Assembly (NCBI GenBank): GCA_950097015.1
Contig: CATNEN010000001.1
Location: forward strand, 11,160,001 to 11,224,000
Source of the DNA: Macrostomum hystrix
Taxonomy: Eukaryota; Animalia; Platyhelminthes
Length of the DNA: 64,000 bases
Direction: 5' to 3'
In this document: one piece after another, positions 26,201-63,495 of the stretch
Numbering within the stretch: position 1 is the stretch's first letter
Layout: each line of letters begins with the position of its first letter
The notes under the pieces: generated by a model
Seen by the model: only the letters and a program-made list of their open reading frames with translations
Database searches by the model: none
What the model was told of the DNA's origin: nothing
Position numbers and translations under genes: made by a program

Positions 26201-29200
26201 CAATGGTGATAGGACTGGTGTTGAAAGAGCTTTCTTCTGGCAGTGCGACCTCTGCGGGCAGTGACATGTCGTCTCTTGGCGGCGGTGGAGACGCGTTAAC
26301 GATGCCAGAGAAAAAGGCTTTTAGTTCGTTTCGCCTCTCTTCGGGCGTGTCACCAGACAGGTTCAGCGTACTGCGCCGTTTACGGCCTGTCAATTGGTTT
26401 ACAACAGACCAAACAGCACGGGGCTTCTTGTCGGGGCCGGCGTCAGTAATTTCTTGAATTGCGGCCTCAACAGCGGCGCGTTGCCGGGCCTTAAAAACCT
26501 CTGCTAAGGCTTTCTCAGCTTCCTCCGCAGGCTGTCCGCTCCTCCGCAGTCTTTCCACAGTTTGCCGGGCCTGTCGCAGCGCCTCGTCGTTTTGCCATAC
26601 AGGCTGACCGCTTGCTACTGGTTTCACCAGAGGCAGCGTTTTAGTAGCGGCAGCCTGGACAGCGCTGCTGACGTCCGAGTATTTGGCAGGTGCTGCTGGT
26701 TCCGGTCGTTTGTCTAGCGCGTCGGCAAAGGCCAGGCAGAAACGGCCTCTTGTGCTTGGGTCGCGCAAGGCGCGGAAAAAGCGCTTTGGCTGCCGCTTCG
26801 GTGGTCGGTATAGTGGGTGCCTAAGGCGCAGTTCACAGTAAAGCAGTCTATGGTCAGACCGAATTGCCAAAGGTGCCACCGTGTCGCAGTTGACTGCACG
26901 GCGCCGTTCCCGCCAGCGGATTAGAATGTGGTCCAGCTGTGCGAGTCTTTTTGTGGCAAACTTTCCACTGGCGTTCCGGGTCGGGCGCTTGCATCCAGTG
27001 AACGTTGCCAGTCTCACAGCTGGTTTCCTAAAGAGAGTGTTCGCTGAGACCAGATCGTGCCGGTCCACGAAATCCATTAGTGCATCGGTGTTGTTGTTTT
27101 CGCGCGGGGTGACAAAGAGAGCTCGTTCAGATTTTCGCATAACAGCGTTGAGGTCTCCAAGCACCAGCACTGAGTCACGCTGAGCAACCGCCTCCAGTTG
27201 CGCCGAGAGGAACTCCAGAAATTGACGGTGCTCCGTCGGGTGCGCAGCTGTGGGTGCATAGGCACAGAATAAGTGAATATTACGGGTGCGGAGACGAAGG
27301 TCGACTCGTAGTAGTCTTGGCGATAAGCTTTCGCATCGAAAACATTTCTGTAGCCGTGGGCTGGTGAGGACACCAACTCCTCCTCGGCCTTTTGCGTCTG
27401 CTGAAGTGAACTGAAGGAGCCAGCCGCCACCGAGGTGCTCCTGATGGAGCCCAGGATCGGTTTTAATAGATAGCTCCTGCAGCATTACAATGTCTAGTTG
27501 CAGATCGGTAGCTAATTTTGCCAGTAGATGTTGCCTCCAACCTGCTCGCAGAGTCCGGCAGTTCCAAGTCGCGACTCTTAGTTGTTGTTTCTGTTTATGC
27601 GGCGTGCAATTTGGTTCAGCTTGGATCCGTTGGTTGTGGACCTCTAGGTCCCCGGCGCCACCCGGAGGAACCGTACCACTGCGCATAGAGGTTCTGCCAG
27701 CAGTGCGACGCTCGCGGGCACGGTGTCGGCCACGGCAGTTTCGCTCGCGGCGTCGTTCAATACGCCGACGCACACTGCGTTGTCCTCGTCTGCAGGGTGG
27801 TGTGCCGCTATAGAAGAAATGCCAACTGTACCAGATACTTGCATTGGTTGTCAATCATTTTTGACCTAGGCTTATCTTATGTAGTTACTTTGACACCTAT
27901 ATCTATTCCATTTAAGAAACTTGAAAAAAACCCTAAAATTTTAAGCAGAATAATGGGAATTGTAGTATGAACTACACTTTATAATTAAATGGGTAATCTA
28001 GTCTAAGTTATATTGTATTGAAAGCTTTTTGTCAAGAACAATTGCAACTAAAAAAACAAAAAATCCACCTGAAATTTACACAAAATATGGGATAATAAAC
28101 ACTATTGCAGATTTAGTAAAAAATTGTAACCAGGATATTATGTAATATTGTAATCTCCCTAAAACAGATTCTAAGCTTATAATAGCTTTTTAAAAATTTG
28201 GAAATTTTATAAAAGCTGAAAGCATGTGACTATAGAACTTCTAAAACAACTCAAAAAAAGCAACCCTTTATTAGTCCACCTTTATTCTCACAGACATATT
28301 CAATGTGTCATATTCAAGCCTCTACTCTATTGTTAGTAGTTATTAATGTGCTTCAACCTTCTATTGAAATTGCGCAGTGTCAGTGCAGTGCATTCGTTCA
28401 TCATTCGACTTGTCGTCCATCGATCTCGATCGAGTTCCGGATCTAATCGAGACCTTCTCAGCCGGCTGTCAATCATTGAACTGCTCCGACGCCGCTATAA
28501 AACGCGAAATCACTGCAGAGGACAAGATTCAAGCTGAGAAACTCAAAGCCGACGGCAATAAATTCATTAGCGAGAACAAATTCTTAGAAGCTGTCAACGC
28601 CTACACCCAGGCCATAGACAAAGATCCTTACAATGCGGTTTATTACGGCAATCGAGCCGCAGCTTACTCTAAGCTGAACGATCACGCCGCTGCTATACGG
28701 GACTGCGAACGGGCTCTACAGAATGACCCCGCCTATTCGAAAGCCTACGGCCGTATGGGCTTCGCCTACGCTGCCCAGAAGAATCATGCTAAAGCTGTGG
28801 AGTGCTACGAGAAGGCTCTTAGCCTGGAGCCCGATAATGCGTCCTATAGGCAAAACCTGGATACAGCTAGGGCCTCGCTGCCTGCTGAAGTATGTTCCTC
28901 TTGTACCTGACCCCGCACCTTCAAAGTGGCCATTCTCCCCATCGACCGAGTCGCCATTCTTCCCCCCACTGAATAGCCATTCTCCCCCTCTGCCAAGCCA
29001 CCATTCTCCACCCTAAAAAGTCGCCATTCTCCACCCAAAAAAGTCGCCATTCTCCACCCTAAGAGTCGCCATTCTCCACCCTAAGAGTCGCCATTCTCCA
29101 CCCTAAGAGTCGCCATTCTCCACCCTAAGAGTCGCCATTCTCCACCCTAAGAGTCACCATTCTCCACCCTAAGAGTCGCCATTCTCCACCCTAAGAGTCG

Positions 29201-45109: not shown

Positions 45110-48100
45110 TCACTGGTAGTGGGAGTACCGCTTCCTTGGCACAAAGCCATACTTGTTAGGCTTACGCGGTGCCTCCCGGTGATTCGTGACAGGTGTCGGA
45201 CCCACTGGCTCATTGATTACTGGGCATTTTCTTGGCCGCAGGTTGTACCGCACCTCTTGCCACTGAAGTGGTGCCGCCGCTTCGCTGGCTGCATCCGCTC
45301 GGTCCTCAGCTTCCTCCTCACGGGCTGGTTCCTCTACAGCATTATGGCCTGATGGCTCCGCTTCAGGTTCTTCTTCACTATCTTCTTCCAACTCTTCTAA
45401 CTCTTCTTCCGTTTCCGTTTCAGAGTCCTCCATAAGTTCTTCTGCCGAACTTCCAGATTCCGTGTCTGGGCCTCCATCAGTTTCCTCAACCTCACTTCCA
45501 CTTATGTCTGTCCCTTTGCGGGCTCTCCATTGGATTCTTTCCTCCTCTGAGTCAGAGCTTTCTTCTTGCTCGATTTCCTGGATTGGCCTTTTCACCATCC
45601 TAGGTTGCGCTTCCCTTCTCTTTTTGGTCTTCTGAGCAGTCTCCTGCCTTCCCTTATCTGTTTGTTCTCTCTTCTCTACGTCAGAACTTATGGTCATATC
45701 CGTGGCTTTGACCGAGTTCGGTACAGGAGTCAGATTATTCCGGTGTACCAGCATCATGGCACCGATTAGTTTTCCATCCTCCTCTTTTTGAACTCGGAAA
45801 ACTGTATCCGAAAGCTTAGCTAACACTCTGTAAGAGGCTCTCTTCTTTCGGTGAAATTTATGACTCTCGTCACCATGCAACTGTGGATTGTTTATCAATA
45901 CGAGACCGCCGATTGGCACGGCCTTGGTGATCACTGTCTCAGCAGCCTGCTCCCGACGGTCTCGCACCTTTTCTAATTTCTTCTGAACCACCTTCTGCAT
46001 CTCCTCAATTCTTTTAGCATGATCGGCTACATAGCTAGGATAGTCGTAGTACAATCTGGGCCTTTTGACAACACTGTCTATTGGCAACTCCGCCTCACGT
46101 CCGAACAATAGATAATGTGGAGTGAATCCTGTTGTCTGATTTACACTCGTTCGAACAGCCACTAAAGCTGCTGGGATCAACAGGTCCCAGTCGGAGTGGT
46201 CTTTCTCAACTAGACAGGTGATGATGGACTTTATCTGACGGTTAAATCTTTCTACAAGGCCGTTGCTTTGCGCATGATATGGCGTCGTGCAGGTATGCTT
46301 GATACCATACAATGTACAAAACGCCTGGAACTGACGGCTCACAAAAGTTTTCCCGTTGTCAGTATGGATCCAACGACACTGACCATACTCACTAAAAATT
46401 CTTTCTTGTAGGAGTTTAATAACTGTGTCCGACTTTTGATTCCTGATTGGAAATGCAAACGGGAACTTAGTAGTGCTGTCGATGACTGTTAGCACGTACT
46501 TGTGTCCTCGTCGGCTTTCTTTAGAAATCGGCCCAATCAGGTCAATGTGTAGGCGATGGAATGCCTCGCACACAGGAAATGTTTGCACCGGTGCCTTCAC
46601 CTTATTACCTGCTTTACTCTCGAGGCATGGGATGCACTCGGCCACATAATTCTCTACAGTAGTAACTAGGCCAGGTTTCCAGAATCGCTCTCGTACCTTT
46701 TGTACGGTTTTATCTCGTCCAAGATGTCCTGCTAAAGGACTGTCATGCAATTCTCGGAGGACCTCTTTTTCTATTCCACTCGGAAGTACTACTTTCCGGG
46801 TACCGTCAGTCACGATGGTTAACATTCCATCCTCAATCTTCATCTGCTCGTATGATTTGATCATCTTTTTCAGCTCGTGACTAGCCCCTGTGGGTAATTC
46901 TGGCCTCAGTATTCCTTGTTCCTTCCACTCAATCAGGATTTTAATGTCCTGATCCTCTCTCTGTGCAATAACCAGCTGTTCCTTCGTCAGTGGTACTGAC
47001 AGGAAATCTGTTAATAATTTTCGGCATGCCGTTGTCTCTTCCAATTCCTCATCTTCGAAATAGTCTCTTGCGTCCACGAAAATTTCATTTGCATCATCAT
47101 CATCTGTATCGATGCCACTGTCTGTCTGACAGCTCTGACTCATCATGGCTCGTCCAGTGATTTGACTTTGGTTAATCTTTGCTTCAGAAGCCTCTTTAAT
47201 TTCCGATGGTCTTCTAGACAAGCTGTCTGCATTGCTATGCTTAGCTCCGCTTCTATGCTGGATCTCATACTGAAACTCACTCAACCGTTCGATCCACCTT
47301 CCTAAAATACCCTGGGCTTCTGTTTGACGTAGTAGCCACAGGATCGCTTTGTGGTCGGTACGTGCCAAGAACTTCTTCCCGATCAAATAGAATCGGAAGT
47401 GTTTCATACCATCCACCAAGGCGAGCAATTCCTTTCGTGTTATCGGATATCGTTTTTCAGATTCCGTCATTGCCCTGCTGAAATAGGCGATTGGTCTTTC
47501 TACTCCATCTGCCTGGATTTGTCCAAGACAGGCTCCTATCCTTCCTTCGGATGCATCAGTGTCTAACACCATTTTGACATTTTCATATTCTGAGAATTCG
47601 GGATAAGCCAACACATCGGTGGACATCATTTTCTGTTTTAGAAGTGCAAACGCCTCGTCATGTTTCGAGTTCCATTTCTCCTTAAAGTTCGTTATACCCT
47701 TTTTGGTTAACTGAAACAGCGGATGCGCTGCTTCGGCATAGTCCTTAACGAATCTACAATAGTAGTTGCATAGGCCCAAGAAACTTCTTAATTCCTTGAC
47801 GTCTTGCGGAGTAGGCCATGATCGGATGGCTTCGATTTTGGCCGGATCTGTTCGAATTCCATTTCGGCCTACTATGTGGCCTAGATATTTCAGTTCTTCT
47901 TGAAACAGATTACATTTTCTTGGTCTCAATTTCAGTCCAGCTTCGGATAATCTCCGGAACACTTCTCGTAGGTGACACAGATGTTCATCGAATTCCTTCG
48001 AGTAAGTAACGATATCGTCGATGTACGACATCGCGAACTTGTGTTGAATGCCGATCAACACAAGGTTCATCAACCTCTGGAAGGTTCCAGGTGCATTTGA

Positions 48101-49726
48101 CAAGCCTTGAGCCATTACTTGGTACTCAAACTGGCCCCTAGTTAATGTCGAGAATGCCGTCATATGTTTGTGCTCTTCTTTAATTGGGACTTGCCAGTAT
48201 CCAGAGTTAAGGTCTAAACTGCTGAAATACTGACTTCCAGTAAGGTGAGAGAATGTCTCCTGAATATTAGGTAACGGATACGGATAGTACTCCACACGAG
48301 AATTCAGTACTCGAAAGTCACTCACGATCCTTATTGTACCATCCTTCTTTGGTACTATGACCAAGGGTGTCGAATAGGTGCTATAACATGGCCTAATCAG
48401 GTTTTTGGCCAGCATGTCATCAAGCAAATCATCCACCTGTTTTTGCAAATGAGGCGGAATTCTGCGAGTCGGTATTCTGACTGGCGTAGTATCTTTAAGA
48501 GCAATTTCATGCGTCACCAAATGTGTCAGACCCATATCTTGCTCGGTCTGAGAGAACGCTGCTCTGTTCTCTTTCAGCAATTGTATAACTTGTTCCTTTT
48601 GTTCCGAATTCATCTCTCCGATGTTAACCTCCTTGATCCATTCATCAATGTCCTTTGAGGCTTCCTCTCTCTTTACAGCATTGACTTGTCCGGTATTTTG
48701 ACTCGAATTGATTGAATTAACAAAATAATTCAAGTTCTTCGCTGTTAATGGCTTGGCATAGCCAATAAGAGCTGCTCCTTTCACTTTGACTTCTCTGTTC
48801 TGTTTATTGACTAGTTCTATGACTCCAACTCCTTCGTTCAAGGTTACTAATGCTGGTACTAGCTCCAGATCATAACCTTTGGCTGCAATATAGCCGTCAT
48901 TAGTCTCAATCACCATGGGAGTACCGTAATTAGCTTCGGCATTTTCTCCCAATCGGATTGGCACTTTCAAAGCACTATTCGCTGGTATCGTGATCTGATT
49001 CTGGCAATAGACTCGTCGAATTCGAACAGGTAGTCTTGTGAACTGAATTGGGATGCAGATCCCATCTTTCAGTACCAAGACTCCTTTACTGAAATTGATA
49101 CCATCACAGTAGTCTTTGAGAAAGTCCATTCCAAGGATGTCGTCACAGTCGTGGTCACACAGAAGAAATCTTGTCTCAATCTCAATTTCTCCGAACTTCA
49201 CTTTAAGCATTGCTTCACCTCTAAGTGACACAACTGATCCGTCAAACGTGGTGACTCTCAAATTGCATGGTTCTATCTCGTCGTCACAAACCACTCTCTT
49301 CCATGAACTCCTACTTAAGAAGTTGTTTCCGGCTCCTGTGTCTATCAAAAACATAATATCTCGCTTTCGTATCTTTCCATTCACAATTGCTTCCTGACCT
49401 TTCTTGACCGGCTCTGGGATTCTGATCGTCTCAATGGGTGACTCACTTTTAATTTCTTTGCTAGCGGCTTTCTGACTTGTTTCACATGGTGTAACTGGTG
49501 CTTTCGCATGTGCTTGCATTTTTGCAGTGCTGGGTGCATACGCATGTTGCTGTCTCATTTCTCGCGGCTGATTAAACTTGTTGAAATAATAATTATTTTT
49601 CTTGTAAGCAAAACGTTGGTTATCAATTTTATACGCACTATTTACAAACTCTGAGGCCTGGAATTTGTTAAAGGATTTTCCGGAGGAACGGGGCCTCGAC
49701 TTACGTCCCTCGTATTTTAGTTTCCC
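45110..49726 (-). CDS. pol: Gypsy Pol (protease, RT, RNase H, integrase, acidic tail), probably made as a -1 frameshift fusion with Gag
   Basis: Protease FLIDTGAG; RT YIDD; RNase H LDTDAS..ELLA..TDH; integrase H-H-C-C and DDE (HIDLIG, HTDNG, VERFN). The frame is open upstream of ATG 49558 to the slippery site. Confidence 0.93.
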   Translation of the reverse strand, partial: GKLKYEGRKSRPRSSGKSFNKFQASEFVNSAYKIDNQRFAYKKNNYYFNKFNQPREMRQQHAYAPSTAKMQAHAKAPVTPCETSQKAASKEIKSESPIETIRIPEPVKKGQEAIVNGKIRKRDIMFLIDTGAGNNFLSRSSWKRVVCDDEIEPCNLRVTTFDGSVVSLRGEAMLKVKFGEIEIETRFLLCDHDCDDILGMDFLKDYCDGINFSKGVLVLKDGICIPIQFTRLPVRIRRVYCQNQITIPANSALKVPIRLGENAEANYGTPMVIETNDGYIAAKGYDLELVPALVTLNEGVGVIELVNKQNREVKVKGAALIGYAKPLTAKNLNYFVNSINSSQNTGQVNAVKREEASKDIDEWIKEVNIGEMNSEQKEQVIQLLKENRAAFSQTEQDMGLTHLVTHEIALKDTTPVRIPTRRIPPHLQKQVDDLLDDMLAKNLIRPCYSTYSTPLVIVPKKDGTIRIVSDFRVLNSRVEYYPYPLPNIQETFSHLTGSQYFSSLDLNSGYWQVPIKEEHKHMTAFSTLTRGQFEYQVMAQGLSNAPGTFQRLMNLVLIGIQHKFAMSYIDDIVTYSKEFDEHLCHLREVFRRLSEAGLKLRPRKCNLFQEELKYLGHIVGRNGIRTDPAKIEAIRSWPTPQDVKELRSFLGLCNYYCRFVKDYAEAAHPLFQLTKKGITNFKEKWNSKHDEAFALLKQKMMSTDVLAYPEFSEYENVKMVLDTDASEGRIGACLGQIQADGVERPIAYFSRAMTESEKRYPITRKELLALVDGMKHFRFYLIGKKFLARTDHKAILWLLRQTEAQGILGRWIERLSEFQYEIQHRSGAKHSNADSLSRRPSEIKEASEAKINQSQITGRAMMSQSCQTDSGIDTDDDDANEIFVDARDYFEDEELEETTACRKLLTDFLSVPLTKEQLVIAQREDQDIKILIEWKEQGILRPELPTGASHELKKMIKSYEQMKIEDGMLTIVTDGTRKVVLPSGIEKEVLRELHDSPLAGHLGRDKTVQKVRERFWKPGLVTTVENYVAECIPCLESKAGNKVKAPVQTFPVCEAFHRLHIDLIGPISKESRRGHKYVLTVIDSTTKFPFAFPIRNQKSDTVIKLLQERIFSEYGQCRWIHTDNGKTFVSRQFQAFCTLYGIKHTCTTPYHAQSNGLVERFNRQIKSIITCLVEKDHSDWDLLIPAALVAVRTSVNQTTGFTPHYLLFGREAELPIDSVVKRPRLYYDYPSYVADHAKRIEEMQKVVQKKLEKVRDRREQAAETVITKAVPIGGLVLINNPQLHGDESHKFHRKKRASYRVLAKLSDTVFRVQKEEDGKLIGAMMLVHRNNLTPVPNSVKATDMTISSDVEKREQTDKGRQETAQKTKKRREAQPRMVKRPIQEIEQEESSDSEEERIQWRARKGTDISGSEVEETDGGPDTESGSSAEELMEDSETETEEELEELEEDSEEEPEAEPSGHNAVEEPAREEEAEDRADAASEAAAPLQWQEVRYNLRPRKCPVINEPVGPTPVTNHREAPRKPNKYGFVPRKRYSHYQ

Positions 49727-50625
49727 TGGTTCTGGAAGTTCTGCTGACCGTTGCCCATCCTCATAGGACAGAATCTGGCAATATGGCCGAGTTTTCCGCA
49801 GTTGAAGCAGGTTCGGTTCTGGTTCAAGAATTGCGGCCCATTGTACTGCGTATTCTGCTGTTGCAGGAACTTAGGTACATATGGCTTCCTTGGTACGTAC
49901 TGTTTCTCAGCCATTTTGCTGGTGAGCTCCTGCAAGAGTTTCTGCTGTCTTTCAATTTCTTCCTTCTGCTTCACAATTGTTGCCCTTAGAGACTCCTCTT
50001 CCTCTTCACCATTTCTGGTAATCCTTACTCCGGCACCTTTGTGTGTCATGCTCCAGGCGGCTTCCAACCTTCTAAGCATTCTCTTTAGTTCCTGTAGATT
50101 GGCAGGCTGAGCAAAGATTAGTTTCTCCCTCATGTCAGCGGATATCTTGGCTCCCTTGATGTATTGCTCAACCAGTTCATCTTCTCGTTGCTCCATTGTC
50201 ATGTTTGGGAAGGCTCTGGCAGCCAGTTCAATCAGACTATCTGAATAGGCTTCTACCGATTCATTCTTGCCTTGCATTCTTCCTCGAAACTCTTCTCTGA
50301 ATTCTGCTGGGCTTCCAGTTCGTCCGAATCTTTCTGCTATCCGCTCCTTGAATTCTTCGTAGTCAAGGTTTTCTGGGAGGTTCATTCTCTGTACAGAGGC
50401 AAATGCTGTGGACAAGTCCAAGTTGGCAAGCAATTCCTGCTTTCGATGGTCCACATCAATTCCTTCTGTCTCGCATCTTTGATCAAATGCGGTGAGCCAC
50501 ACCTGAATATCCTGATTAGGTGTGAACTTTTGGATCTTCACATGGCGTGTTAGAGCAATCTCCAACCGATTTCTCAGCTCTTCCGCGAGTACAGCCATCA
50601 AATCTTGTGCTTGAGCTTGATCCAT
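49717..50625 (-). CDS. gag: Gypsy Gag with CCHC zinc knuckle
   Basis: RMQGKNESVEAY capsid-type motif; CFNCGKLGHIARFC. Confidence 0.92.
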   Translation of the reverse strand: MDQAQAQDLMAVLAEELRNRLEIALTRHVKIQKFTPNQDIQVWLTAFDQRCETEGIDVDHRKQELLANLDLSTAFASVQRMNLPENLDYEEFKERIAERFGRTGSPAEFREEFRGRMQGKNESVEAYSDSLIELAARAFPNMTMEQREDELVEQYIKGAKISADMREKLIFAQPANLQELKRMLRRLEAAWSMTHKGAGVRITRNGEEEEESLRATIVKQKEEIERQQKLLQELTSKMAEKQYVPRKPYVPKFLQQQNTQYNGPQFLNQNRTCFNCGKLGHIARFCPMRMGNGQQNFQNQGN

Positions 50626-50669
50626 TGTTACTCCTCAATGGGGTTATTTCGCTGTTTCTCTGATCCTTT

Positions 50670-52960: not shown

Positions 52961-53822
52961 AGATAGTGACTATCGATGAGATAGCTGAGGTAGTGGGTAT
53001 CTCTCACGGCAGTGCCCACTCGATTGTCACCATCAGCCTTGGTCTGAGCAAGCTGAGTACCCGCTGGGTACCGCGGCTGTTGCGGCCTGAACACCGGGTT
53101 CAGCGCACTGAATGTGCCATCAGCCTGCTGAACCGCCTGGACGCCAACTCCGAAGACTTCTACCAGCGATTGGTGACCGGCGATGAAACGTGGATATATC
53201 AGTACGATCCCGAGTCCAAAGTCCAGTCTAAGTAGTGGCTGCCACGTGGTTCAGCGGGTCCCAAGAAGTTCCGTGCCGAGCGGTCAGCAGCGAAGGTCTT
53301 GGCGACTGTGTTCTGGGATGCTGACGGAGTTGTGATGGTTGACTTCCTAGAAAGCCAGAAAACCATCAACGCCATCTACTACGAGTCGCTTTTGCGAAAG
53401 CTCCGCACCGAACTGGCCAAAAAGCGACCTGGCAAGCTGCACCGTGGAGTGCTCTTCCACCACGACAATGCACCAGCCCACACTTCTCGACTGTGCCGGG
53501 AGGCTCTGCAAGATTTCCGCTGGGAAATACTTCAGCATCCTCCGTACAGCCCTGATTTGGCTCCTTCAGACTTTTTGTTTCCAAAGCTGAAGGAGGCGAT
53601 CAAGGGAGTTCGACATGACAGCAAGGAGGCTGCCAAGAAGGCTACCGTACAGTGGCTTGCTGCGCAGCCTCCTGCCTTCTACATGAATGGCCTGGAGAGA
53701 TGGCGACACCGCATGGAGAAGTGTCTGACCCTGGAGGGGGATTATGTAGAAAAGTAGATTTGTGCGTGAAGCTTGAAGCTCGTGACAATAATATTATCAT
53801 TACTTTTTGACTGACCCTCGTA
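52961..53822 (+). mobile_element. 5'-truncated mariner (DD34D) transposon with pseudogenised transposase
   Basis: WVPRLL, TGDETWI, HDNAPAH, HPPYSPDLAPSDF; in-frame TAG at 53233-53235; 3' TIR ..TTTTTGACTGACCCTCG followed by TA; no left TIR. Confidence 0.9.
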
Positions 53823-54379
53823 TATGGCTATGTAGACGTAGAATTATATTGACTGAAGCATGCATTAGGCCTATAGCTATCTAGCCCATAGCCAACTAGA
53901 GCCAAATCTTTATATATAATTTGTCAATTGTGAATGGTTAGTTAGCTAATGTTATTCTTGCCACTGATCAAGTGATAGCTGGGTTAATGGTAGCAGTGCA
54001 GAAGTGTGTCATTGCTAGGAGATTAGAATAATGCGCTAAGAACTAGGCTACAAAACTTATTGTTTTTTTTAGTTTAAAAATTCAGATATGAATTTAAAAT
54101 TCATAATTAATAATTAGGCCACTTATAAAAATATTAATTGGCTTAAAAATAGCTGTGTAAGGAATAATGCTTCATGTAAATATATGTGTACATGTAGAGC
54201 TTCTTATAGAGCTTCATATTCTAGTACTAATTAAGTCTTTAGGTGGTAAAAAAGCGAAACACAAATTTAAAGCTAATTATAGTAAAATATTAATTTTGTA
54301 TTCTTTTATAATCAAATTTAAAAATAGACCCCGTTGCACTCCAAATTTCAGGTCCGTTTTACATAAAATAGAACACAAA

Positions 54380-57300
54380 ATGACAGACAAATTACTTGTA
54401 CTCCGCCTATACAAGGGTCTGTTGCGTTATATTAATACTTTGCAACTTTCTGACAGGCATTTCATTGTTAATAGACTTCAAGTAGAATTCAGGAAGCCAT
54501 GCAACACTAACCAGCAATTGCAGCTACAAATTCAGGTGAGTGAAGCCAAACTATTTCTAAACAAGTGCTAGCTGTTACCCCATTCTTTTATAACATTAGA
54601 TTTCTTATCTTTTTACTATCAGTACATTTTCTATCCAAAAATATTACAGAATCCCTAAATAATTAGAAATCCCTAGTATCGCAGAATCCTATTGAACCAG
54701 AAATCCCCAGTATCGCAGAATCCCTAAATAATTAGAAATCCCCAGTATCGCAGAATCCCTAAATATAATAATAATTAGAAATCCCCAGTATCGCAGAATC
54801 CTATTGAACCAGAAATCCCCAGTATCGCAGAATCCCTAAATAATTAGAAATCCCCAGTATCGCAGAATCCTATTGAACCAGAAATCCCCAGTATCGCAGA
54901 ATCCCTAAATAATTTGAAATCCCCAGTATCGCAGAATCCTATTGAACCAGAAATCCCCAGTATCGCAGAATCCCTAAATAATTTGAAATCCTCAGTATCG
55001 CAGAATCCTATTGAACCAGAAATCCCCAGTATCGCAGAATCCCTAAATAATTAGAAATCCCCAGTATCGCAAAATCCTATTGAACCAGAAATCCCCAGTA
55101 TCGCAGAATCCCTAAATAATTTGAAATCCCCAGTATCGCAGAATCCTATTGAACCAGAAATCCCCAGTATCGCAGAATCCCTAAATAATTTGAAATCCCC
55201 AGTATCGCAGAATCCTATTGAACCAGAAATCCCCAGTATCGCAGAATCCCTAAATAATTTGAAATCCCCAGTATCACAGAATCCCTAAATAATTTGAAAT
55301 CCCCAGTATCGCAGAATCCTATTGAACCAGAAATCCCCAGTATCGCAGAATCCTATTGAACCAGAAATCCCCAGTATCGCAGAATCCCTAAATAATTTGA
55401 AATCCCCTGTATCACAGAATCCCTAAATAATTTGAAATCCCCAGTATCACAGAATCCCTAAATAATTTGAAATCCCCAGTATCACAGAATCCCTAAATAA
55501 TCGGAAATCCCCAGTATCACAGAATCCCTAAATAATCGGAAATCCCCAGTATCACAGAATCCCTAAATAATTAGAAATCCCCAGTATCGCAGAATCCCTA
55601 AATAATCGGAAATCCCCAGTATCGCAAAATCCCTAAATAGCCAGAAATCCCCAGTATCACAGAATCCCTAAATAATTAGAAATCCCCAGTATCGCAAAAT
55701 CCCTATTTAACCAGAAATCCCCAGAATCGCAGAATCCCTAAATAATTAGAAATCCCCAGTATCACAGAATCCCTAAATAATTAGAAATCCCCAGTATCAC
55801 AGAATCCCTAAATAATTAGAAATCCCCAGAATCGCAGAATCCCTAAATAATTAGAAATCCCCAGTATCGCAAAATCCCTATTTAACCAGAAATCCCCAGA
55901 ATCGCAGAATCCCTAAATAATTAGAAATCCCCAGTATCACAAAATCCCTAAATAATTAGAAATCCCCAGTATCACAGAATCCCTAAATAATCGGAAATCC
56001 CCAGTATCGCAAAATCCCTATTGAACCAGAAATCCCCAGAATCGCAGAATCCCTAAATAATTAGAAATCCCCAGTATCGCAAAATCCCTATTTAACCAGA
56101 AATCCCCAGAATCGCAGAATCCCTAAATAATTAGAAATCCCCAGTATCACAGAATCCCTAAATAATTAGAAATCCCCAGTATCACAGAATCCCTAAATAA
56201 TCGGAAATCCCCAGTATCGCAAAATCCCTATTGAACCAGAAATCCCCAGAATCGCAGAATCCCTAAATAATTAGAAATCCCCAGTATCGCAAAATCCCTA
56301 TTTAACCAGAAATCCCCAGAATCGCAGAATCCCTAAATAATTAGAAATCCCCAGTATCACAAAATCCCTAAATAATTAGAAATCCCCAGTATCACAGAAT
56401 CCCTAAATAATTAGAAATCCCCAGTATCGCAAAATCCCTAAATAATTAGAAATCCCCAGTATCACAGAATCCCTAAATAATTAGAAATCCCCAGTATCAC
56501 AGAATCCCTAAATAATTAGAAATCCCCAGTATCGCAGAATCCCTAAATAATTAGAAATCCCCAGTATCGCAGAATCCCTAAATAATTAGAAATCCCCAGT
56601 ATCACAGAATCCCTAAATAATCGGAAATCCCCAGTATCACAGAATCCCTAAATAATTAGAAATCCCCAGTATCACAGAATCCCTAAATAATTAGAAATCC
56701 CCAGTATCACAGAATCCCTAAATAATCGGAAATCCCCAGTATCGCTGAATCCCTAAATAATTAGAAATCCCCAGTATCGCAGAATCCCTAAATAATCGGA
56801 AATCCCCAGTATCACAGAATCCCTAAATAATCGGAAATCCCCAGTATCGCAAAATCCCTATTGAACCAGAAATCCCCAGAATCGCAGAATCCCTAAATAA
56901 TCGGAAATCCCCAGAATCGCAGAATCCCTAAATAATCGGAAATCCCCAGTATCGCAAAATCCCTATTGAACCAGAAATCCCCAGAATCGCAGAATCCCTA
57001 AATAATTAGAAATCCCCAGTATCGCAAAATCCCTATTTAACCAGAAATCCCCAGAATCGCAGAATCCCTAAATAATTAGAAATCCCCAGTATCACAGAAT
57101 CCCTATTTAACCAGAAATCCCCAGAATCGCAGAATCCCTAAATAATTAGAAATCCCCAGAATCGCAGAATCCCTAAATAATTAGAAATCCCCAGTATCGC
57201 AAAATCCCTATTTAACCAGAAATCCCCAGAATCGCAGAATCCCTAAATAATTAGAAATCCCCAGTATCACAGAATCCCTAAATAATTAGAAATCCCAAGT

Positions 57301-58687
57301 ATCACAGAATCCCTATTTAACCAGAAATCCCCAGAATCGCAGAATCCCTAAATAATTAGAAATCCCCAGTATCACAGAATCCCTAAATAATTAGAAATCC
57401 CCAGTATCACAGAATCCCTAAATAATTAGAAATCCCCAGTATCGCAGAATCCCTAAATAATCGGAAATCCCCAGAATCGCAGAATCCCTAAATAATTAGA
57501 AATCCCCAGTATCACAGAATCCCTAAATAATTAGAAATCCCCAGTATCACAGAATCCCTAAATAATTAGAAATCCCCAGTATCGCAAAATCCCTATTGAA
57601 CCAGAAATCCCCAGAATCGCAGAATCCCTAAATAATCGGAAATCCCCAGTATCGCAAAATCCCTAAATAATTAGAAATCCCCAGAATCGCAAAATCCCTA
57701 TTTAACCAGAAATCCCCAGTATCGCAAAATCCCTAAATAATTAGAAATCCCCAGTATCGCAAAATCCCTATTTAACCAGAAATCCCCAGAATCGCAGAAT
57801 CCCTAAATAATCGGAAATCCCCAGTATCACAGAATCCCTAAATAATCGGAAATCCCCAGTATCACAGAATCCCTAAATAATCGGAAATCCCCAGTATCAC
57901 AGAATCCCTAAATAATTAGAAATCCCCAGTATCGCAAAATCCCTATTTAACCAGAAATCCCCAGAATCGCAGAATCCCTAAATAATCGGAAATCCCCAGT
58001 ATCACAGAATCCCTAAATAATTAGAAATCCCCAGTATCACAGAATCCCTAAATAATTAGAAATCCCCAGAATCGCAAAATCCCTATTTAACCAGAAATCC
58101 CCAGTATCGCAAAATCCCTAAATAATTAGAAATCCCCAGTATCGCAAAATCCCTATTTAACCAGAAATCCCCAGAATCGCAGAATCCCTAAATAATCGGA
58201 AATCCCCAGTATCACAGAATCCCTAAATAATTAGAAATCCCCAGTATCGCAAAATCCCTATTTAACCAGAAATCCCCAGAATCGCAGAATCCCTAAATAA
58301 TCGGAAATCCCCAGTATCACAGAATCCCTAAATAATTAGAAATCCCCAGTATCGCAAAATCCCTATTTAACCAGAAATCCCCAGAATCGCAGAATCCCTA
58401 AATAATCGGAAATCCCCAGTATCACAGAATCCCTAAATAATTAGAAATCCCCAGTATCGCAAAATCCCTATTTAACCAGAAATCCCCAGAATCGCAGAAT
58501 CCCTAAATAATCGGAAATCCCCTGTATAACAGAATCCCTAAATAACGAGATCCCCTGTATCACAGAATCCCTAAATAACGAGATCCCTAAATGTTCGGTT
58601 TGTATAATAATACACCAACAATAAATTTAATTTTATTTATAATTTCAGAGAGCCGAAACTCTGCTAAGAAATCGCCCGCTTTTGTAA
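54380..58687 (+). CDS. 64-aa LYR-motif microprotein, L0R8F8/AltMIEF1 (MIEF1 uORF)-like, 2 exons
   Basis: Exons 54380-54535 and 58649-58687 give MTDKLLVLRLYKGLLRYINTLQLSDRHFIVNRLQVEFRKPCNTNQQLQLQIQ|RAETLLRNRPLL*. Pattern VLxLYKxLLR..L..(S/T)D..F....EFRK; splice sites CAG|gtgagt and tttcag|, phase 0. Confidence 0.82.
54650..58590. repeat. 35-bp minisatellite (AGAAATCCCCAGTATCACAGAATCCCTAAATAATT)n, ~110 copies, filling the LYR intron
   Basis: Direct periodicity, with alternating variants giving ~70-bp higher-order units. Confidence 0.96.
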
Positions 58688-58733
58688 GGACAACTGTTCT
58701 GAACGCCTTGATCTGCCCAGTTTATTTTTAATT

Positions 58734-61700
58734 ATGGTTCGCAACAATATTCTGGATTTGTTAAAATTGTCGGCATTTAGATTCCTGTATAAAGGTTAGG
58801 ACTATATTTAAAGTTTATACAAAACTACCTTTAAATGCTATTGTAGATCAAAACATACTGCTAAATACACACGGCTTTTAGAATTCAAATTTCTATAGAA
58901 TTCTAAATATAGCTTTCTGTTGTTATGCATCTAGTTCACTTTTTATTCTGCTTGTAGCTGTTTCTAGTTAAGCTAGTGTTCTCGAATCTTTTAGAAGATA
59001 GAGAGAAACGAAAAAGTTGTGCTTTTCTTATCTCTTTTATGTAGATCGCCTTTCATTTGAATCTCTTAGTAGGTATACTTTATTTTTTCTGTGCTCATTC
59101 GCCACTTAAGCAGACCTGCGCGGCGTTCATTCTTAATTCTCTAGGTACAAAGTCTTCTAGAAGAAGAGAATAAGGTGGTTCTGCTTGGTTAAATTGCGCT
59201 GCTTATTGAATCATTTATAGCCTTTTAAAAACTTACACATCTTCTTTTCGAATTTGTCATTTAGTTAGCTGCCCACTGTCTCACTGACTTCATATGACTG
59301 TATCTCCCTTCATATCAGTCCGTAACTCCCTTCATATGAGTCTAACTACCTTCATATGAGTCTGTAACTCCCTTCATATGAGTCTGTAACTCCCTTCATA
59401 TCAGTCCGTAACTCCCTTCATATGAGTCTGTAACTCCCTTCATATGAGTCTGTAACTCCCTTCATATGAGTCTGTAACTCCCTTCATATGAGTCTAACTA
59501 CCTTCATATGAGTCTGTAACTCCCTTCATATGAGTCTGTAACTCCCTTCATATGAGTCTGTAACTACCTTCATATGAGTCTGTAACTCCCTTCCTATGAG
59601 TCTGTAACTCCCTTCATATGAGTCTGTAACTCCCTTCATATGAGTCTGTAACTCCCTTCATCTCTGTCAGTTGTTCCCTTCATCTCTGTCAGTAACTCCC
59701 TTCATCTCGGTCAGTAACTCCCTTCATCTCTGTCAGTAACTCCCTACATCTGAGTCTGTAACTCCCTTCATCTCTGTCAGTAACTCCCTTCATCTCTGTC
59801 AGTAACTCCCTTCATCCCTGTCAGTAACTCCCTTCATCTCTGTCAGTAACTCCCTTCATCTCTGTCAGTAACTCCCTTCATCTCTGTCAGTAACTCCCTT
59901 CATCTCTGTCAGTAACTCCCTTCATCTCTGTCAGTAACTCCCTTCATCTCTGTCAGTAACTCCCTTCATCTCTGTCAGTAACTCCCTTCATCTGTCAGTA
60001 ACTCCCTACACTTGAGTATGTTACTCCCTACATCTGAGTCTGTAACTCCCTTCATCTCTGTCAGTAACTCCCTTCATCTCTGTCAGTAACTCCCTTCATC
60101 TCTGTCAGTAACTCCCTACATCTGAGTCTGTAACTCCCTTCATCTCTGTCAGTAACTCCCTTCATCTCTGTCAGTAACTCCCTTCATCCCTGTCAGTAAC
60201 TCCCTTCATCTCTGTCAGTAACTCCCTTCATCTCTGTCAGTAACTCCCTTCATCTCTGTCAGTAACTCCCTTCATCTCTGTCAGTAACTCCCTTCATCTC
60301 TGTCAGTAACTCCCTTCATCTCTGTCAGTAACTCCCTTCATCTCTGTCAGTAACTCCCTTCATCTGTCAGTAACTCCCTACACTTGAGTATGTTACTCCC
60401 TACATCTGAGTCTGTAACTCCCTACATCTCAGGCTACCTTCATCTCATTATCTTAGCCTGTTAACACAAGAAAATTACTCACAAACTGTTACCAACTGAC
60501 ATTGCAGTCTACCACATTCGCGTCCACGAGTTCGGCGGCCGCCGAGTCGCCGTCCGTTAATCTTCTACTCCAACCCTGGCTAGTTGTTGTGATCATTGTG
60601 ATAATCGATTTCGCCATACAATGGGTCTGTTTTCCAATAGCTTTCGCTTTGAAAACCGAGAAATTCTACGACATGGCCGGCTCACTAACTCACCTGGCTG
60701 TTGTATGGCTGGCGTTCGGCCTACTGGCTGGCTTTAGGCACGTGCGATGCATTGTGCAATGCGTTTGCGTGTCCTTGTGGGCTCTGCGATTGGGAATCTA
60801 CCTGGTCTACAGGTAAGCTGCCAATCACTCGCCGCGCCTTTTTTCCAAGACTTCCGAAGACTCTAAACTTTTTTTCAATTGGTCACTCCGACATTCATTG
60901 ATTGGTCACTCAAACATTATTTGATATTTTCACTCCGACATTCTTTGATTGGTCACTCCGACATTCTTTGATTGGTCACTCCGACATTCTTTGATTGGTC
61001 ACTCCGACATTCTTTAATTGGTCACTCCGACATTCTTTAATTGGTCACTCCGACATTCTTTAGTTGGTCACTCCGACATTCTTTAATTGGTCACTCCGAC
61101 ATTCTTTAATTGGTCACTCCGACATTCTTTAATATTTTCACTACGACATTCTTTAATTGGTTACTCTGACATTCTTTAGTTGGTCACTCCGACATTCTTT
61201 AATTGGTCACTCCGACATTCTTTAATTGGTCACTCCGACATTCTTTAGTTGGTCACTCCGACATTCTTTAATATTTTCACTACGACATTCTTTAATTGAT
61301 TACTCTGACATTCTTTAGTTGGTCACTCCAGCATTCTCCAGTTATTCACTCCAAAATTATTTCATTGGTCACTTCGACATTCATTAATATTTTTACTCCG
61401 ACATTCTTTAATTGGTCACTCCTGCATTCTTTAATTGGTCACTGACATTCTTTAGTTGGTCACTCCAGCATTCTCCAGTTATTCACTCCAAAATTATTTA
61501 ATTGGTCACTTCGACATTCATTAATATTTTTACTCCGACATTCTTCAATTGGTCACTCCTGCATTCTTTAATTGGTCACTGACATTCTTTGGTTGGTCAC
61601 TCCAGCATTCTTGGTCACTCTAAGATAGATCCCAGGATCTCACTCCCTCGCCCGAATCTCGCCTAATCAAACAGAGCTGCTAAGCACGGCGATCGCCGCT

Positions 61701-62254
61701 TCGCCGAGATCCGTACCAGCTGTCCTCGATTCTTCATCACCTGGACTATGCAAGCGGTTTGGGTTGGCTGCAATCTGGCTCCAACCGTTGCTATGCTAAC
61801 CGCTTCGTCAACGGTTGCCATGCCGACTGCATTGGAATGGCGCGACTATCTCGGCTGGAGCATCTTTCTAATCGGCATCCTGACTGAGACCGTGGCCGAC
61901 GCTCAGAAGTCCGTATTCAAAGAGCGACAGGAAAATGCCGGCCGTTTTATCAAATCCGGCCTCTGGTCGGTGTCGAGACATCCCAACTACCTGGGCGAAA
62001 TCACACTGTGGTGGGGCCTGGCCATATCCTCATCCGCCGGATTTCACTATGCGACTGAATGGTGGTACTGGTTCACCTGGATTGGCCCATTGTTGAATAC
62101 CTTGCTAGTGTGCTTCGTTAGCGGCATTCCACTGTTGGAGAAGTCTGCCTACAAGCGTTGGGCTGAGGACCCGGAGTATCAGGAATACCTCAAGAGTACG
62201 CCTGTACTGCTGCCTCTGGTGCCTTGTCCGTTGTGCGACTTTTGCAAGGAGTAG
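58734..62254 (+). CDS. DUF1295 / steroid 5-alpha-reductase-like membrane protein
   Basis: Exons 60508-60812 (DFAIQW..KTEKFYDMAGS..WALRLG.YL) and 61675-62254 (HGDRRF..WTMQAVW..ETVADAQK..FIKSGLWSVSRHPNYLGEI..WWG..VSGIPLLEK). Start proposed as ATG 58734-58736 spliced in phase 0; the start is less certain than the body. Confidence 0.85.
59285..60440. repeat. 22-bp minisatellite with two variant blocks (GTAACTCCCTTCATATGAGTCT / GTAACTCCCTTCATCTCTGTCA)
   Basis: Direct periodicity; variant switch near 59660. Confidence 0.94.
60877..61620. repeat. 23-bp minisatellite (TTGGTCACTCCGACATTCTTTAA)n in the DUF1295 intron
   Basis: Direct periodicity. Confidence 0.92.
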
Positions 62255-62274: not shown

Positions 62275-63495
62275 AGGTGATTCTTGAGAATTGACCTCCC
62301 TAATATACAGTGATTATTGAGAATTGACCTCCCTAATATTCAGTGATTCTTGAGAATTGACCTCCCTAATATTCAGTTATTCTTGAGAATTGACCTCCCT
62401 AATATTCAGTGATTCTTTAGATTTGACCCCCCTAATATTCAGTGATTCTTTAGATTTGACCTCCCTAATATTCAGTGATTCTTTAGATTTGACCCCCCTA
62501 ATATTCAGTGATTCTTGAGATTCGACCTCCCTAATATTCAGTGATTCTTTAGATTTGACCTCCCTAATATTCAGTGATTCTTTAGATTTGACCCCCCTAA
62601 TATTCAGTGATTCTTGAGATTCGACCTCCCTAATATTCAGTGATTCTTTAGATTTGACCTCCCTAATATTCAGTGATTCTTTAGATTTGACCTCCCCTAA
62701 CCTTCAGTGATTCTTGAGAATTGACCTCCCTAATATTCAGTGATTCTTTAGATTTGACCTCCCTAACCTTCAGTGATTCTTTAGATTTGACCTCCCTAAC
62801 CTTCAGTGATTATTTAGATTTTACCTCCCTAACCTTCAGTGATTCTTTAGATTTGACCTCCCTAACCTTCAGTGATTATTTAGATTTTACCTCCCTAATA
62901 TTCAGTGATTATTTAGATTTGACCTCCCTAATATTCAGTGATTATTTAGATTTTACCTCCCTAATATTCAGTGATTATTTAGATTTGACCTCCCTAACCT
63001 TCAGTGATTATTTAGATTTGACCTCCCTAACCTTCAGTGATTATTTAGATTTTACCTCCCTAACCTTCAGTGATTCTTTAGATTTGACCTTCCTAACCTT
63101 CAGTGATTCTTTAGATTTGACCTTCCTAACCTTCAGTGATTATTTAGATTTGACCTTCCTAACCTTCAGTGATTCTTTAGATTTGACCTTCCTAACCTTC
63201 AGTGATTCTTTAGATTTGACCTCCCTAACCTTCAGTGATTATTTAGATTTGACCTCCCTAACCTTCAGTGATTATTTAGATTTGACCTCCCTAACCTTCA
63301 GTGATTATTTAGATTTGACCTTCCTAACCTTCAGTGATTCTTTAGATTTGACCTTCCTAACCTTCAGTGATTCTTTAGATTTGACCTTCCTAACCTTCAG
63401 TGATTATTTAGATTTGACCTTCCTAACCTTCAGTGATTATTTAGATTTGACCTCCCTAACCTTCAGTGATTATTTAGATTTGACCTCCCTAACGT
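62275..63495. repeat. 33-bp minisatellite (CAGTGATTCTTTAGATTTGACCTCCCTAATATT)n 3' of DUF1295
   Basis: Direct periodicity; produces the spurious 266-aa ORF. Confidence 0.95.

What the first reader, a model, noticed from the sequence alone, without database searches (positions are those of the whole stretch)
54352..62254. Candidate bicistronic mRNA: L0R8F8/AltMIEF1-like LYR microprotein as a uORF of a DUF1295 reductase-like gene
Seen: a spliced 64-aa LYR ORF (54380-54535 + 58649-58687). The DUF1295 exon at 60508 begins at a strong acceptor (CTGAC..TTGCAG|). It has an in-frame TAG upstream and no in-frame ATG until after its first TM segment, so the start must come from an upstream exon. 46 nt after the LYR stop lies ATG|gttcgc (58734-58736); splicing it in phase 0 gives MSTTFAS... 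No AATAAA was seen between the LYR stop and the next array, and +3T donors occur elsewhere in this window (gttagt, gttagc, gtttgg). Known: human L0R8F8/AltMIEF1, an LYR protein that binds mt-ACP/MALSU1 on the assembling mitoribosomal large subunit, is encoded as a uORF of MIEF1. Inference: the uORF arrangement is kept here with a different downstream partner, possibly coupling a mitochondrial ACP-binding factor to a lipid enzyme by re-initiation or leaky scanning.
Basis: partly seen in the sequence, partly recalled or inferred. Interest (0 to 1): 0.85.

Follow-up and report, generated by a model that had tools for sequence, protein, structure and literature searches.

The report
Flatworm operon: LYR microprotein, then DUF1295
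In this Macrostomum flatworm a 64-residue AltMIEF1-like mitochondrial microprotein gene lies just upstream of a DUF1295 membrane-enzyme gene that has no start codon of its own; the start most likely comes from the AUG that ends the trans-spliced leader, an ordinary flatworm operon rather than a uORF-type bicistronic mRNA.

Summary
The spliced 64-aa LYR ORF is real: its M. lignano orthologue is also 64 aa, and exon 2 matches it at 8 of 12 residues. It belongs to the AltMIEF1/L0R8F8 subfamily (profile against PDB: AltMIEF1 E 1.8e-13, next LYRM4 2e-5). The DUF1295 exon at 60508 opens at an acceptor, with a TAG upstream and no in-frame ATG before 60673.

The proposed ATG|gttcgc mini-exon has no support. 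ATGGT occurs at chance frequency, and the donor does not fit GT[G/A]AG.

The window is from a Macrostomum flatworm. Its genome holds at least 19 spliced-leader genes. The one read in full carries the published 35-nt M. lignano leader, which ends in ATG. Joined at 60508 in phase 0, it gives M-STTFAS.... TTGCAG| fits the published trans-splice acceptor motif.

In M. lignano the two orthologues are adjacent. They are named g1 and g2 under one transcriptional-unit prefix, and g2 is a 5'-partial CDS starting at codon 2.

The best reading is an SL-resolved two-gene operon with a leader-donated start codon. Both mechanisms are already known in flatworms.

Other readers of this scan noted the same start-codon habit elsewhere in this genome.

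The parts
54346..54351 (+). TTTCAG acceptor 28 nt before the LYR ATG. It may be the SL trans-splice site of the upstream gene, or simply 5'-UTR sequence.
   Evidence: Sequence. It fits the M. lignano trans-splice acceptor motif [T/C]TNCAG. Its use was not tested.
54380..54535 (+). LYR (AltMIEF1-like) coding exon 1: 52 codons, ending in phase 0, donor gtgagt.
   Evidence: Pfam Complex1_LYR E 5e-5, 23.6 bits against a cut-off of 24.8. The only PDB hits are AltMIEF1. 58% identical to M. lignano P0121.
54647..58578 (.). 35-bp minisatellite, about 112 copies, filling the 4.1-kb LYR intron.
58649..58687 (+). LYR coding exon 2: 12 codons plus TAA. The 3' UTR continues downstream; the poly(A) site is unknown.
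   Evidence: 8 of 12 residues identical to the C-terminus of M. lignano P0121.
58734..58739 (+). I read it as a chance match, not as an exon end.
   Evidence: ATGGT is at chance frequency. The donor lacks GT[G/A]AG, the motif found at 65% of M. lignano donors.
58688..60507 (+). Intercistronic region or outron: 1820 nt, or 689 nt without the array.
   Evidence: There is no stop-free stretch of 110 codons or more on either strand.
59300..60430 (.). 22-bp minisatellite, about 52 copies, in the intercistronic region.
60502..60507 (+). TTGCAG acceptor, the proposed SL trans-splice site. CTGAC, a candidate branch point, lies at 60496-60500.
   Evidence: Sequence. It fits [T/C]TNCAG.
60508..60812 (+). 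DUF1295 coding exon A: 101 codons plus 2 nt, phase 0 from its first base, no ATG before 60673, donor gtaagc.
   Evidence: 82% identical to M. lignano P0126 over residues 18-101, aligned position for position.
60877..61612 (.). 23-bp minisatellite, about 32 copies, in the DUF1295 intron.
61675..62254 (+). DUF1295 coding exon B, ending in TAG.
   Evidence: Pfam DUF1295 E 2.6e-45. 81% identical to M. lignano P0126 residues 103-293.

Best explanation
This is a two-gene, spliced-leader-resolved operon of a Macrostomum flatworm.

One primary transcript runs through the AltMIEF1-like LYR gene (two exons, 64 aa) and on through a repeat-filled spacer into the DUF1295 gene. The upstream message is cleaved and polyadenylated somewhere after 58687. 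The 35-nt spliced leader, which ends in AUG, is trans-spliced to the TTGCAG| acceptor at 60507/60508.

Because the exon is in phase 0 from its first base, the leader's AUG becomes codon 1 of a 295-aa DUF1295 protein (M-STTFAS...). The mature DUF1295 mRNA is then monocistronic and carries the leader cap. The LYR ORF is a separate upstream cistron, not a uORF.

Shown here:
- both gene models;
- the subfamily of the LYR protein;
- the missing ATG;
- the leader genes in this genome;
- the fit of phase and acceptor motif;
- conserved adjacency and the g1/g2 naming in M. lignano.

Inferred: the trans-splice junction itself, co-transcription in this species, and the position of the LYR poly(A) site.
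For: - Taxon: DUF1295 exon B is 81% identical to M. lignano BOX15_Mlig019460g2.
- Leader genes: 19 exact copies of the last 18 nt of the M. lignano leader plus GTAAG are present in G000, against 0 for the control pattern.
- Leader sequence: L001 1484-1518 is identical to the published 35-nt leader ending TTGCATG (PMC8629364). The 109-nt gene folds into three hairpins, z -3.6.
- Phase: the exon at 60508 is open in phase 0 from its first base. Conserved coding sequence, including the first TM segment, lies upstream of the first ATG.
- Acceptor: it fits the trans-splice motif [T/C]TNCAG.
- Leader AUG: the flatworm leader AUG is an established initiator (Cheng et al. 2006, cited in PMC12582326). 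It is noted as a start codon for Macrostomum in PMC10468722.
- M. lignano adjacency: the LYR orthologue is PAA72697.1 Mlig019460g1 and the DUF1295 orthologue is PAA72698.1 Mlig019460g2, 'partial'. A second locus has PAA83331.1 and PAA83332.1.
- M. lignano annotation method: transcriptional units were often multi-gene precursors. They were cut at experimentally mapped trans-splice and poly(A) sites after the leader had been trimmed (PMC5730564). This explains a CDS that starts at codon 2 (ADSTT), while the UniProt models read MADSTT.
- Spacing: the repeat-adjusted spacer is 689 nt, below the 1-kb operon threshold used for M. lignano.
Against:
- The 689-nt adjusted spacer is longer than the roughly 100-nt mode of M. 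lignano operons.
- No canonical poly(A) signal was found after the LYR stop.
- My reading of the g1/g2 naming is an inference from the paper's methods, not a look at the M. lignano locus.
- Flatworm acceptors can serve both cis- and trans-splicing (PMC12582326), so a minor cis-spliced isoform is not excluded.
Confidence: 0.75

Rival explanations
1. LYR exon 2 runs on to 58736, and ATG|GTTCGC is spliced to 60508. This gives a mature bicistronic mRNA in which the LYR ORF is a uORF and DUF1295 is translated by leaky scanning or re-initiation.
For: The ATG and a GT are in the right place and phase. There is no AATAAA between the ORFs. UniProt M. lignano models start M-ADSTT, which either model predicts. 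Tiny ATG exons are said to exist in this genome (scan note s1-316733, not tested here).
Against: ATGGT occurs at chance frequency: 1 seen, 1.2 expected. GTTCGC lacks the GT[G/A]AG core of Macrostomum donors. Six other equally weak ATG...GT options exist in the spacer. The transcript-based M. lignano annotation splits the pair into two genes, with g2 5'-partial at codon 2. A cis ATG exon would have prevented that.
Confidence: 0.07
2. Two independent genes. DUF1295 has its own promoter in the spacer, and its outron is replaced by the leader. The leader AUG is still the start codon, but there is no co-transcription with the LYR gene.
For: Most trans-spliced M. lignano genes are not in operons. 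The spacer is 1.8 kb with 612 nt of unique sequence. The adjusted distance is above the usual roughly 100 nt.
Against: The M. lignano orthologues share a transcriptional-unit prefix at two loci. Adjacency and orientation are conserved between species whose DUF1295 proteins are only 81% identical. The adjusted distance is below the 1-kb operon threshold.
Confidence: 0.13
3. Shared-first-exon alternative splicing. 54535 is joined to 60508; both are phase 0. This gives an LYR(1-52)-DUF1295 fusion protein alongside the 64-aa microprotein.
For: The frames are compatible. The donor gtgagt is strong.
Against: No homologue among those read shows such a fusion. The M. lignano proteins start M-ADSTT. 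The M. lignano genes are annotated separately.
Confidence: 0.03

Closest known systems
SL trans-spliced operons of Macrostomum lignano (Wudarski et al. 2017, PMC5730564; Ustyantsev and Berezikov 2021, PMC8629364)
   Same: Same genus. The 35-nt leader is identical. The acceptor motif is [T/C]TNCAG. It is a same-strand gene pair with a repeat-rich spacer below 1 kb after repeat adjustment. The orthologous pair is named g1/g2 under one transcriptional-unit prefix.
   Different: The spacer is longer than the typical roughly 100 nt. Trans-splicing at this site in this species was not observed directly.
[quoted passage not shown] 2006, J Biol Chem 281:733, as cited in PMC12582326)
   Same: The gene lacks its own ATG. 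The reading frame opens exactly at the acceptor in phase 0. The leader ends in AUG.
   Different: Here it is a free-living macrostomid rather than a parasite. Use of the AUG is inferred, not assayed.
Human AltMIEF1 / L0R8F8 (MIEF1 upstream ORF protein; PDB 5OOL, 7QH7 and others)
   Same: The size is 64 aa against 70 aa. It has an L-Y-K/R motif near the N-terminus, a downstream EFRK block and a helical C-terminal third. AltMIEF1 is the best PDB match by a wide margin.
   Different: It is not a uORF of MIEF1. It has its own two-exon gene, and its downstream neighbour is a DUF1295 gene. Binding to mt-ACP, MALSU1 or the mitoribosome was not tested.
DUF1295 (PF06966), the steroid 5-alpha-reductase-like membrane protein family
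   Same: Full-length match over both exons, with 44-51% identity to animal and bacterial members.
   Different: The biochemical function of the family is unknown, and nothing here adds to it.

Membership tests
AltMIEF1 / L0R8F8 subfamily of LYR proteins | Closer in sequence to AltMIEF1 than to other LYR subfamilies. | tested here: met
   With exon 1 alone, the only PDB hits at E<=10 are human and mouse AltMIEF1 (E 0.04). The M. lignano orthologue gives E 0.004. A 5-sequence profile gives AltMIEF1 1.8e-13 against LYRM4 2e-5 and NDUFB9 0.27.
AltMIEF1 / L0R8F8 subfamily of LYR proteins | Microprotein of about 60-70 aa with an L-Y-R/K tripeptide and a conserved downstream F. | tested here: met
   64 aa. 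L10-Y11-K12 and E36-F37-R38 are invariant in the alignment.
AltMIEF1 / L0R8F8 subfamily of LYR proteins | Encoded as an upstream ORF on the MIEF1 mRNA (the vertebrate arrangement). | tested here: not met
   The downstream gene is DUF1295, not MIEF1. This is a feature of gene arrangement, not of the protein family. A fly homologue is annotated as a gene of its own (P0156).
AltMIEF1 / L0R8F8 subfamily of LYR proteins | Binds mt-ACP and MALSU1 on the mitoribosomal large-subunit intermediate. | not tested
   No complex prediction or experiment was done.
Pfam Complex1_LYR (PF05347) | Score at or above the gathering threshold. | tested here: inconclusive
Exon 1 alone scores 23.6 bits against a cut-off of 24.8. 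Homologues P0123-P0125 pass at 34-38 bits.
DUF1295 (PF06966) | Profile match above the gathering threshold across the domain. | tested here: met
   Exon A scores 22.4 bits (profile positions 2-59) and exon B 155.2 bits (positions 67-235), against a cut-off of 20.4.
SL trans-spliced gene with leader-donated AUG | The genome encodes an SL RNA whose leader ends in AUG before a GU donor. | tested here: met
   19 exact copies, the full 35-nt leader followed by GTAAG and a three-hairpin fold.
SL trans-spliced gene with leader-donated AUG | The reading frame opens at the acceptor in phase 0, with no own ATG before conserved coding sequence. | tested here: met
SL trans-spliced gene with leader-donated AUG | RNA molecules with the leader joined to the acceptor. 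| not testable with these tools
Indirect evidence: the M. lignano orthologue's CDS is 5'-partial from codon 2.
Macrostomum operon (criteria of PMC8629364) | Same-strand neighbours, downstream gene trans-spliced, repeat-adjusted distance below 1 kb. | tested here: inconclusive
   Same strand, nothing coding in between, adjusted distance 689 nt. Trans-splicing of the downstream gene is inferred, not seen.
   No reads were available. The M. lignano annotation separates the two genes, which argues against it.

The most novel reading that the evidence does not exclude
The AltMIEF1-type microprotein may be habitually expressed from someone else's transcript. In vertebrates it is a uORF of MIEF1. In Macrostomum it is the first cistron of a conserved operon with a DUF1295 membrane enzyme. 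A share of the RNA might escape trans-splicing and act as a true bicistronic message, coupling a mitochondrial ACP-binding factor to a lipid-type enzyme.
Probability: 0.08. Interest if true: 0.55.

Novelty: new member of a known kind. Interest (0 to 1): 0.2.

Why it matters
It corrects a tempting reading. In flatworms, an exon that opens at an acceptor without an ATG should first be read as a trans-splice site that receives the leader's AUG. Annotation pipelines that trim the leader will call such genes 5'-partial.

The one small new point is that the AltMIEF1 orthologue of Macrostomum is a stand-alone two-exon gene held next to a DUF1295 gene in at least two species, probably as an operon. 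This shows that the vertebrate uORF arrangement is not ancestral to the protein. Nothing here opens a new question by itself.

Tried and rejected
- Exons were searched one by one by reference.
- The search for homologous proteins with LYR exon 1 alone found nothing because it shared too few words. The HMMER library search and the profile search did find relatives.
- Rfam has no family matching the SL RNA gene.
- No second copy or retrocopy of either gene exists in G000 that could have preserved a leader-exon junction.
- Translation from the internal ATG at 60673 was considered and rejected. The 55 codons before it are conserved with M. lignano and include the first TM segment and the start of the Pfam domain.
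- GTAAGG at 58684, which overlaps the LYR stop, was considered as a donor to 60508 and rejected. It shifts the frame and leaves DUF1295 without a start.
Full report
**What is in the sequence.**
The stretch holds two same-strand genes separated and interrupted by minisatellites.

- The first gene has a 52-codon exon (54380-54535, donor gtgagt).
- A 4.1-kb intron follows, almost wholly made of a 35-bp repeat (54647-58578).
- Its second exon has 12 codons plus TAA (58649-58687).
- The second gene has an exon that starts at 60508 after ttgcag| and ends at 60812 (donor gtaagc).
- Its intron holds a 23-bp repeat, and its last exon is 61675-62254.
- In the DUF1295 frame there is a TAG 18 codons before the acceptor. 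The first ATG comes only at 60673.
- Pfam places DUF1295 profile positions 2-59 on residues 42-100 of exon A and positions 67-235 on exon B. So the first ATG lies inside the domain, and the first TM segment lies before it.

**Whose genome it is.**
Exon B is 81% identical to a Macrostomum lignano protein. The other relatives are 44-51% identical, apart from one unnamed Logan sequence at 70%. The assembly has 220 Mb in 42 contigs. Macrostomum is a flatworm genus with spliced-leader (SL) trans-splicing and operons (PMC8629364, PMC5730564, PMC10468722).

**The LYR microprotein.**
- The HMMER search of 1.8 billion representatives found a 64-aa protein, P0121, at E 2e-10. It is M. lignano PAA72697.1.
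- P0121 has the same length as the spliced model. Its last 12 residues match exon 2 at 8 of 12 positions. So the 54535>58649 splice is confirmed by homology.
- Against all PDB chains, exon 1 alone hits only human and mouse AltMIEF1 (E 0.04).
- The M. lignano orthologue gives E 0.004.
- A five-sequence profile gives AltMIEF1 1.8e-13, LYRM4 2e-5 and NDUFB9 0.27.

Binding to mt-ACP and MALSU1 follows only from family knowledge.

**Where the DUF1295 start codon comes from.**
- The published M. lignano leader is 35 nt long and ends in ATG.
- Its last 18 nt followed by GTAAG occur 19 times exactly in this genome, against 0 for the control pattern.
- At L001 1484-1518 the whole 35-nt leader is identical, and the 109-nt gene folds into three hairpins.
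- Joined to 60508, the leader's ATG is in phase with the exon and gives M-STTFAS....
- The acceptor TTGCAG fits the motif [T/C]TNCAG found at M. lignano trans-splice sites.
- The flatworm leader AUG is an established initiator (Cheng et al. 2006, cited). It is noted as the start codon in Macrostomum.
- The proteins are conserved upstream of the first ATG: 82% identity over residues 18-101, position for position. This region must therefore be translated.

**Evidence from M. lignano.**
- The LYR orthologue is PAA72697.1, BOX15_Mlig019460g1. The DUF1295 orthologue is PAA72698.1, BOX15_Mlig019460g2, flagged partial.
- A second locus gives PAA83331.1 and PAA83332.1. A third LYR copy is Mlig018510g1.
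- Consecutive accession numbers and one shared prefix for two unrelated genes mean that they sit side by side in one assembled transcriptional unit.
- Wudarski et al. state that such units were often precursors holding several genes. The units were cut into genes at experimentally mapped trans-splice and poly(A) sites, and leaders were trimmed before mapping.
- This accounts for a g2 CDS that begins at codon 2 (ADSTT), while the UniProt models of the same genes read MADSTT.
- A cis-spliced ATG exon would have been part of the transcript and would have given a complete CDS.

This is my inference from names and methods. I could not read the M. lignano locus itself.

ATGGT occurs 42 times on this strand of the window, so 1.2 are expected in the 1820-nt spacer and one is seen. 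Six other ATG...GT combinations in the right phase exist there, all with poor donors. GTTCGC lacks GT[G/A]AG, the core found at 65% of M. lignano donors. Nothing marks the site as functional. It cannot be excluded as a minor isoform, since flatworm acceptors can serve both cis- and trans-splicing.

**Operon or independent genes.**
- The spacer is 1820 nt, of which 1131 nt is a 22-bp array. That leaves 689 nt, below the 1-kb repeat-adjusted threshold used for M. lignano operons but above their roughly 100-nt mode.
- Upstream of the LYR gene lie only transposon remains: a mariner fragment at 52966-53757 and a Ty3/gypsy element at 45113-50634. The LYR gene would therefore be the first cistron.
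- Taken with the shared transcriptional unit in M. lignano, I put co-transcription at roughly 0.6-0.65 and the leader-donated AUG at about 0.8.

**Comparison and verdict.**
Both mechanisms are textbook for flatworms and are documented in this genus. Other readers of this scan report the same ATG-less pattern for other genes of this genome. One of those cases is said to be confirmed by assembled RNA. These are leads that I did not test.

The finding is a further member of a known kind. The only new detail is that the AltMIEF1 orthologue is a stand-alone gene kept next to DUF1295 in two Macrostomum species.

**Limits.**
No RNA reads were available.

Noticed in passing
window 54647-58578, 59300-60430, 60877-61612, 62277-63493: Every non-coding interval of this locus (LYR intron, spacer, DUF1295 intron, 3' flank) holds its own minisatellite with a different unit (35, 22, 23 and 33 bp). 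Together they make up about 7 kb of the 9 kb.
   Followed up: partly
window 58684-58689: A consensus-like donor, GTAAGG, overlaps the LYR stop codon (TTG TAA GG). Spliced to 60508, it would extend the LYR frame by about 25 codons into the DUF1295 exon in another frame.
   Followed up: no
window 54535 and 60508: LYR exon 1 ends in phase 0 and DUF1295 exon A starts in phase 0. Skipping LYR exon 2 would give an in-frame LYR-DUF1295 fusion. The homologues give no evidence for it.
   Followed up: partly
window 54346-54379: A TTTCAG acceptor lies 28 nt before the LYR ATG. If the leader joins there, its AUG opens a 5-codon uORF (MVRFT, then a stop) that ends 13 nt before the LYR start.
   Followed up: no
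G000 C15, C17 and C42 (for example C17:2760-37717): The spliced-leader genes recur at about 11.6-kb spacing in long arrays, in both orientations on C17. One solitary copy lies on C1, 4.8 Mb from this window.
   Followed up: no
window 45113-50634 (-): A Ty3/gypsy-type retrotransposon with long open gag (302 aa) and pol (1482 aa: protease, RT, RNase H, integrase) frames. It looks intact.
   Followed up: partly
window 24699-27854 (-): A LINE ORF of 1052 codons with an AP-type endonuclease and reverse transcriptase.
   Followed up: no
window 52966-53757 (+): A mariner-type transposase remnant in two frames (Transposase_1, DDE_3), 0.6 kb upstream of the LYR gene.
   Followed up: no
L008 (G000:C14:984840-985049, - strand): A DUF1295 paralogue, 47% identical, has its own ATG 18 nt after a CTTCAG acceptor. 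A leader AUG joined there would be in frame with it, with no stop between.
   Followed up: no
P0131 (M. lignano Mlig018510g1): In one of the three M. lignano LYR copies the frame stays open for 18 codons upstream of the ATG to the transcript end, and the copy is flagged partial. The other copies are complete at 64 aa.
   Followed up: no
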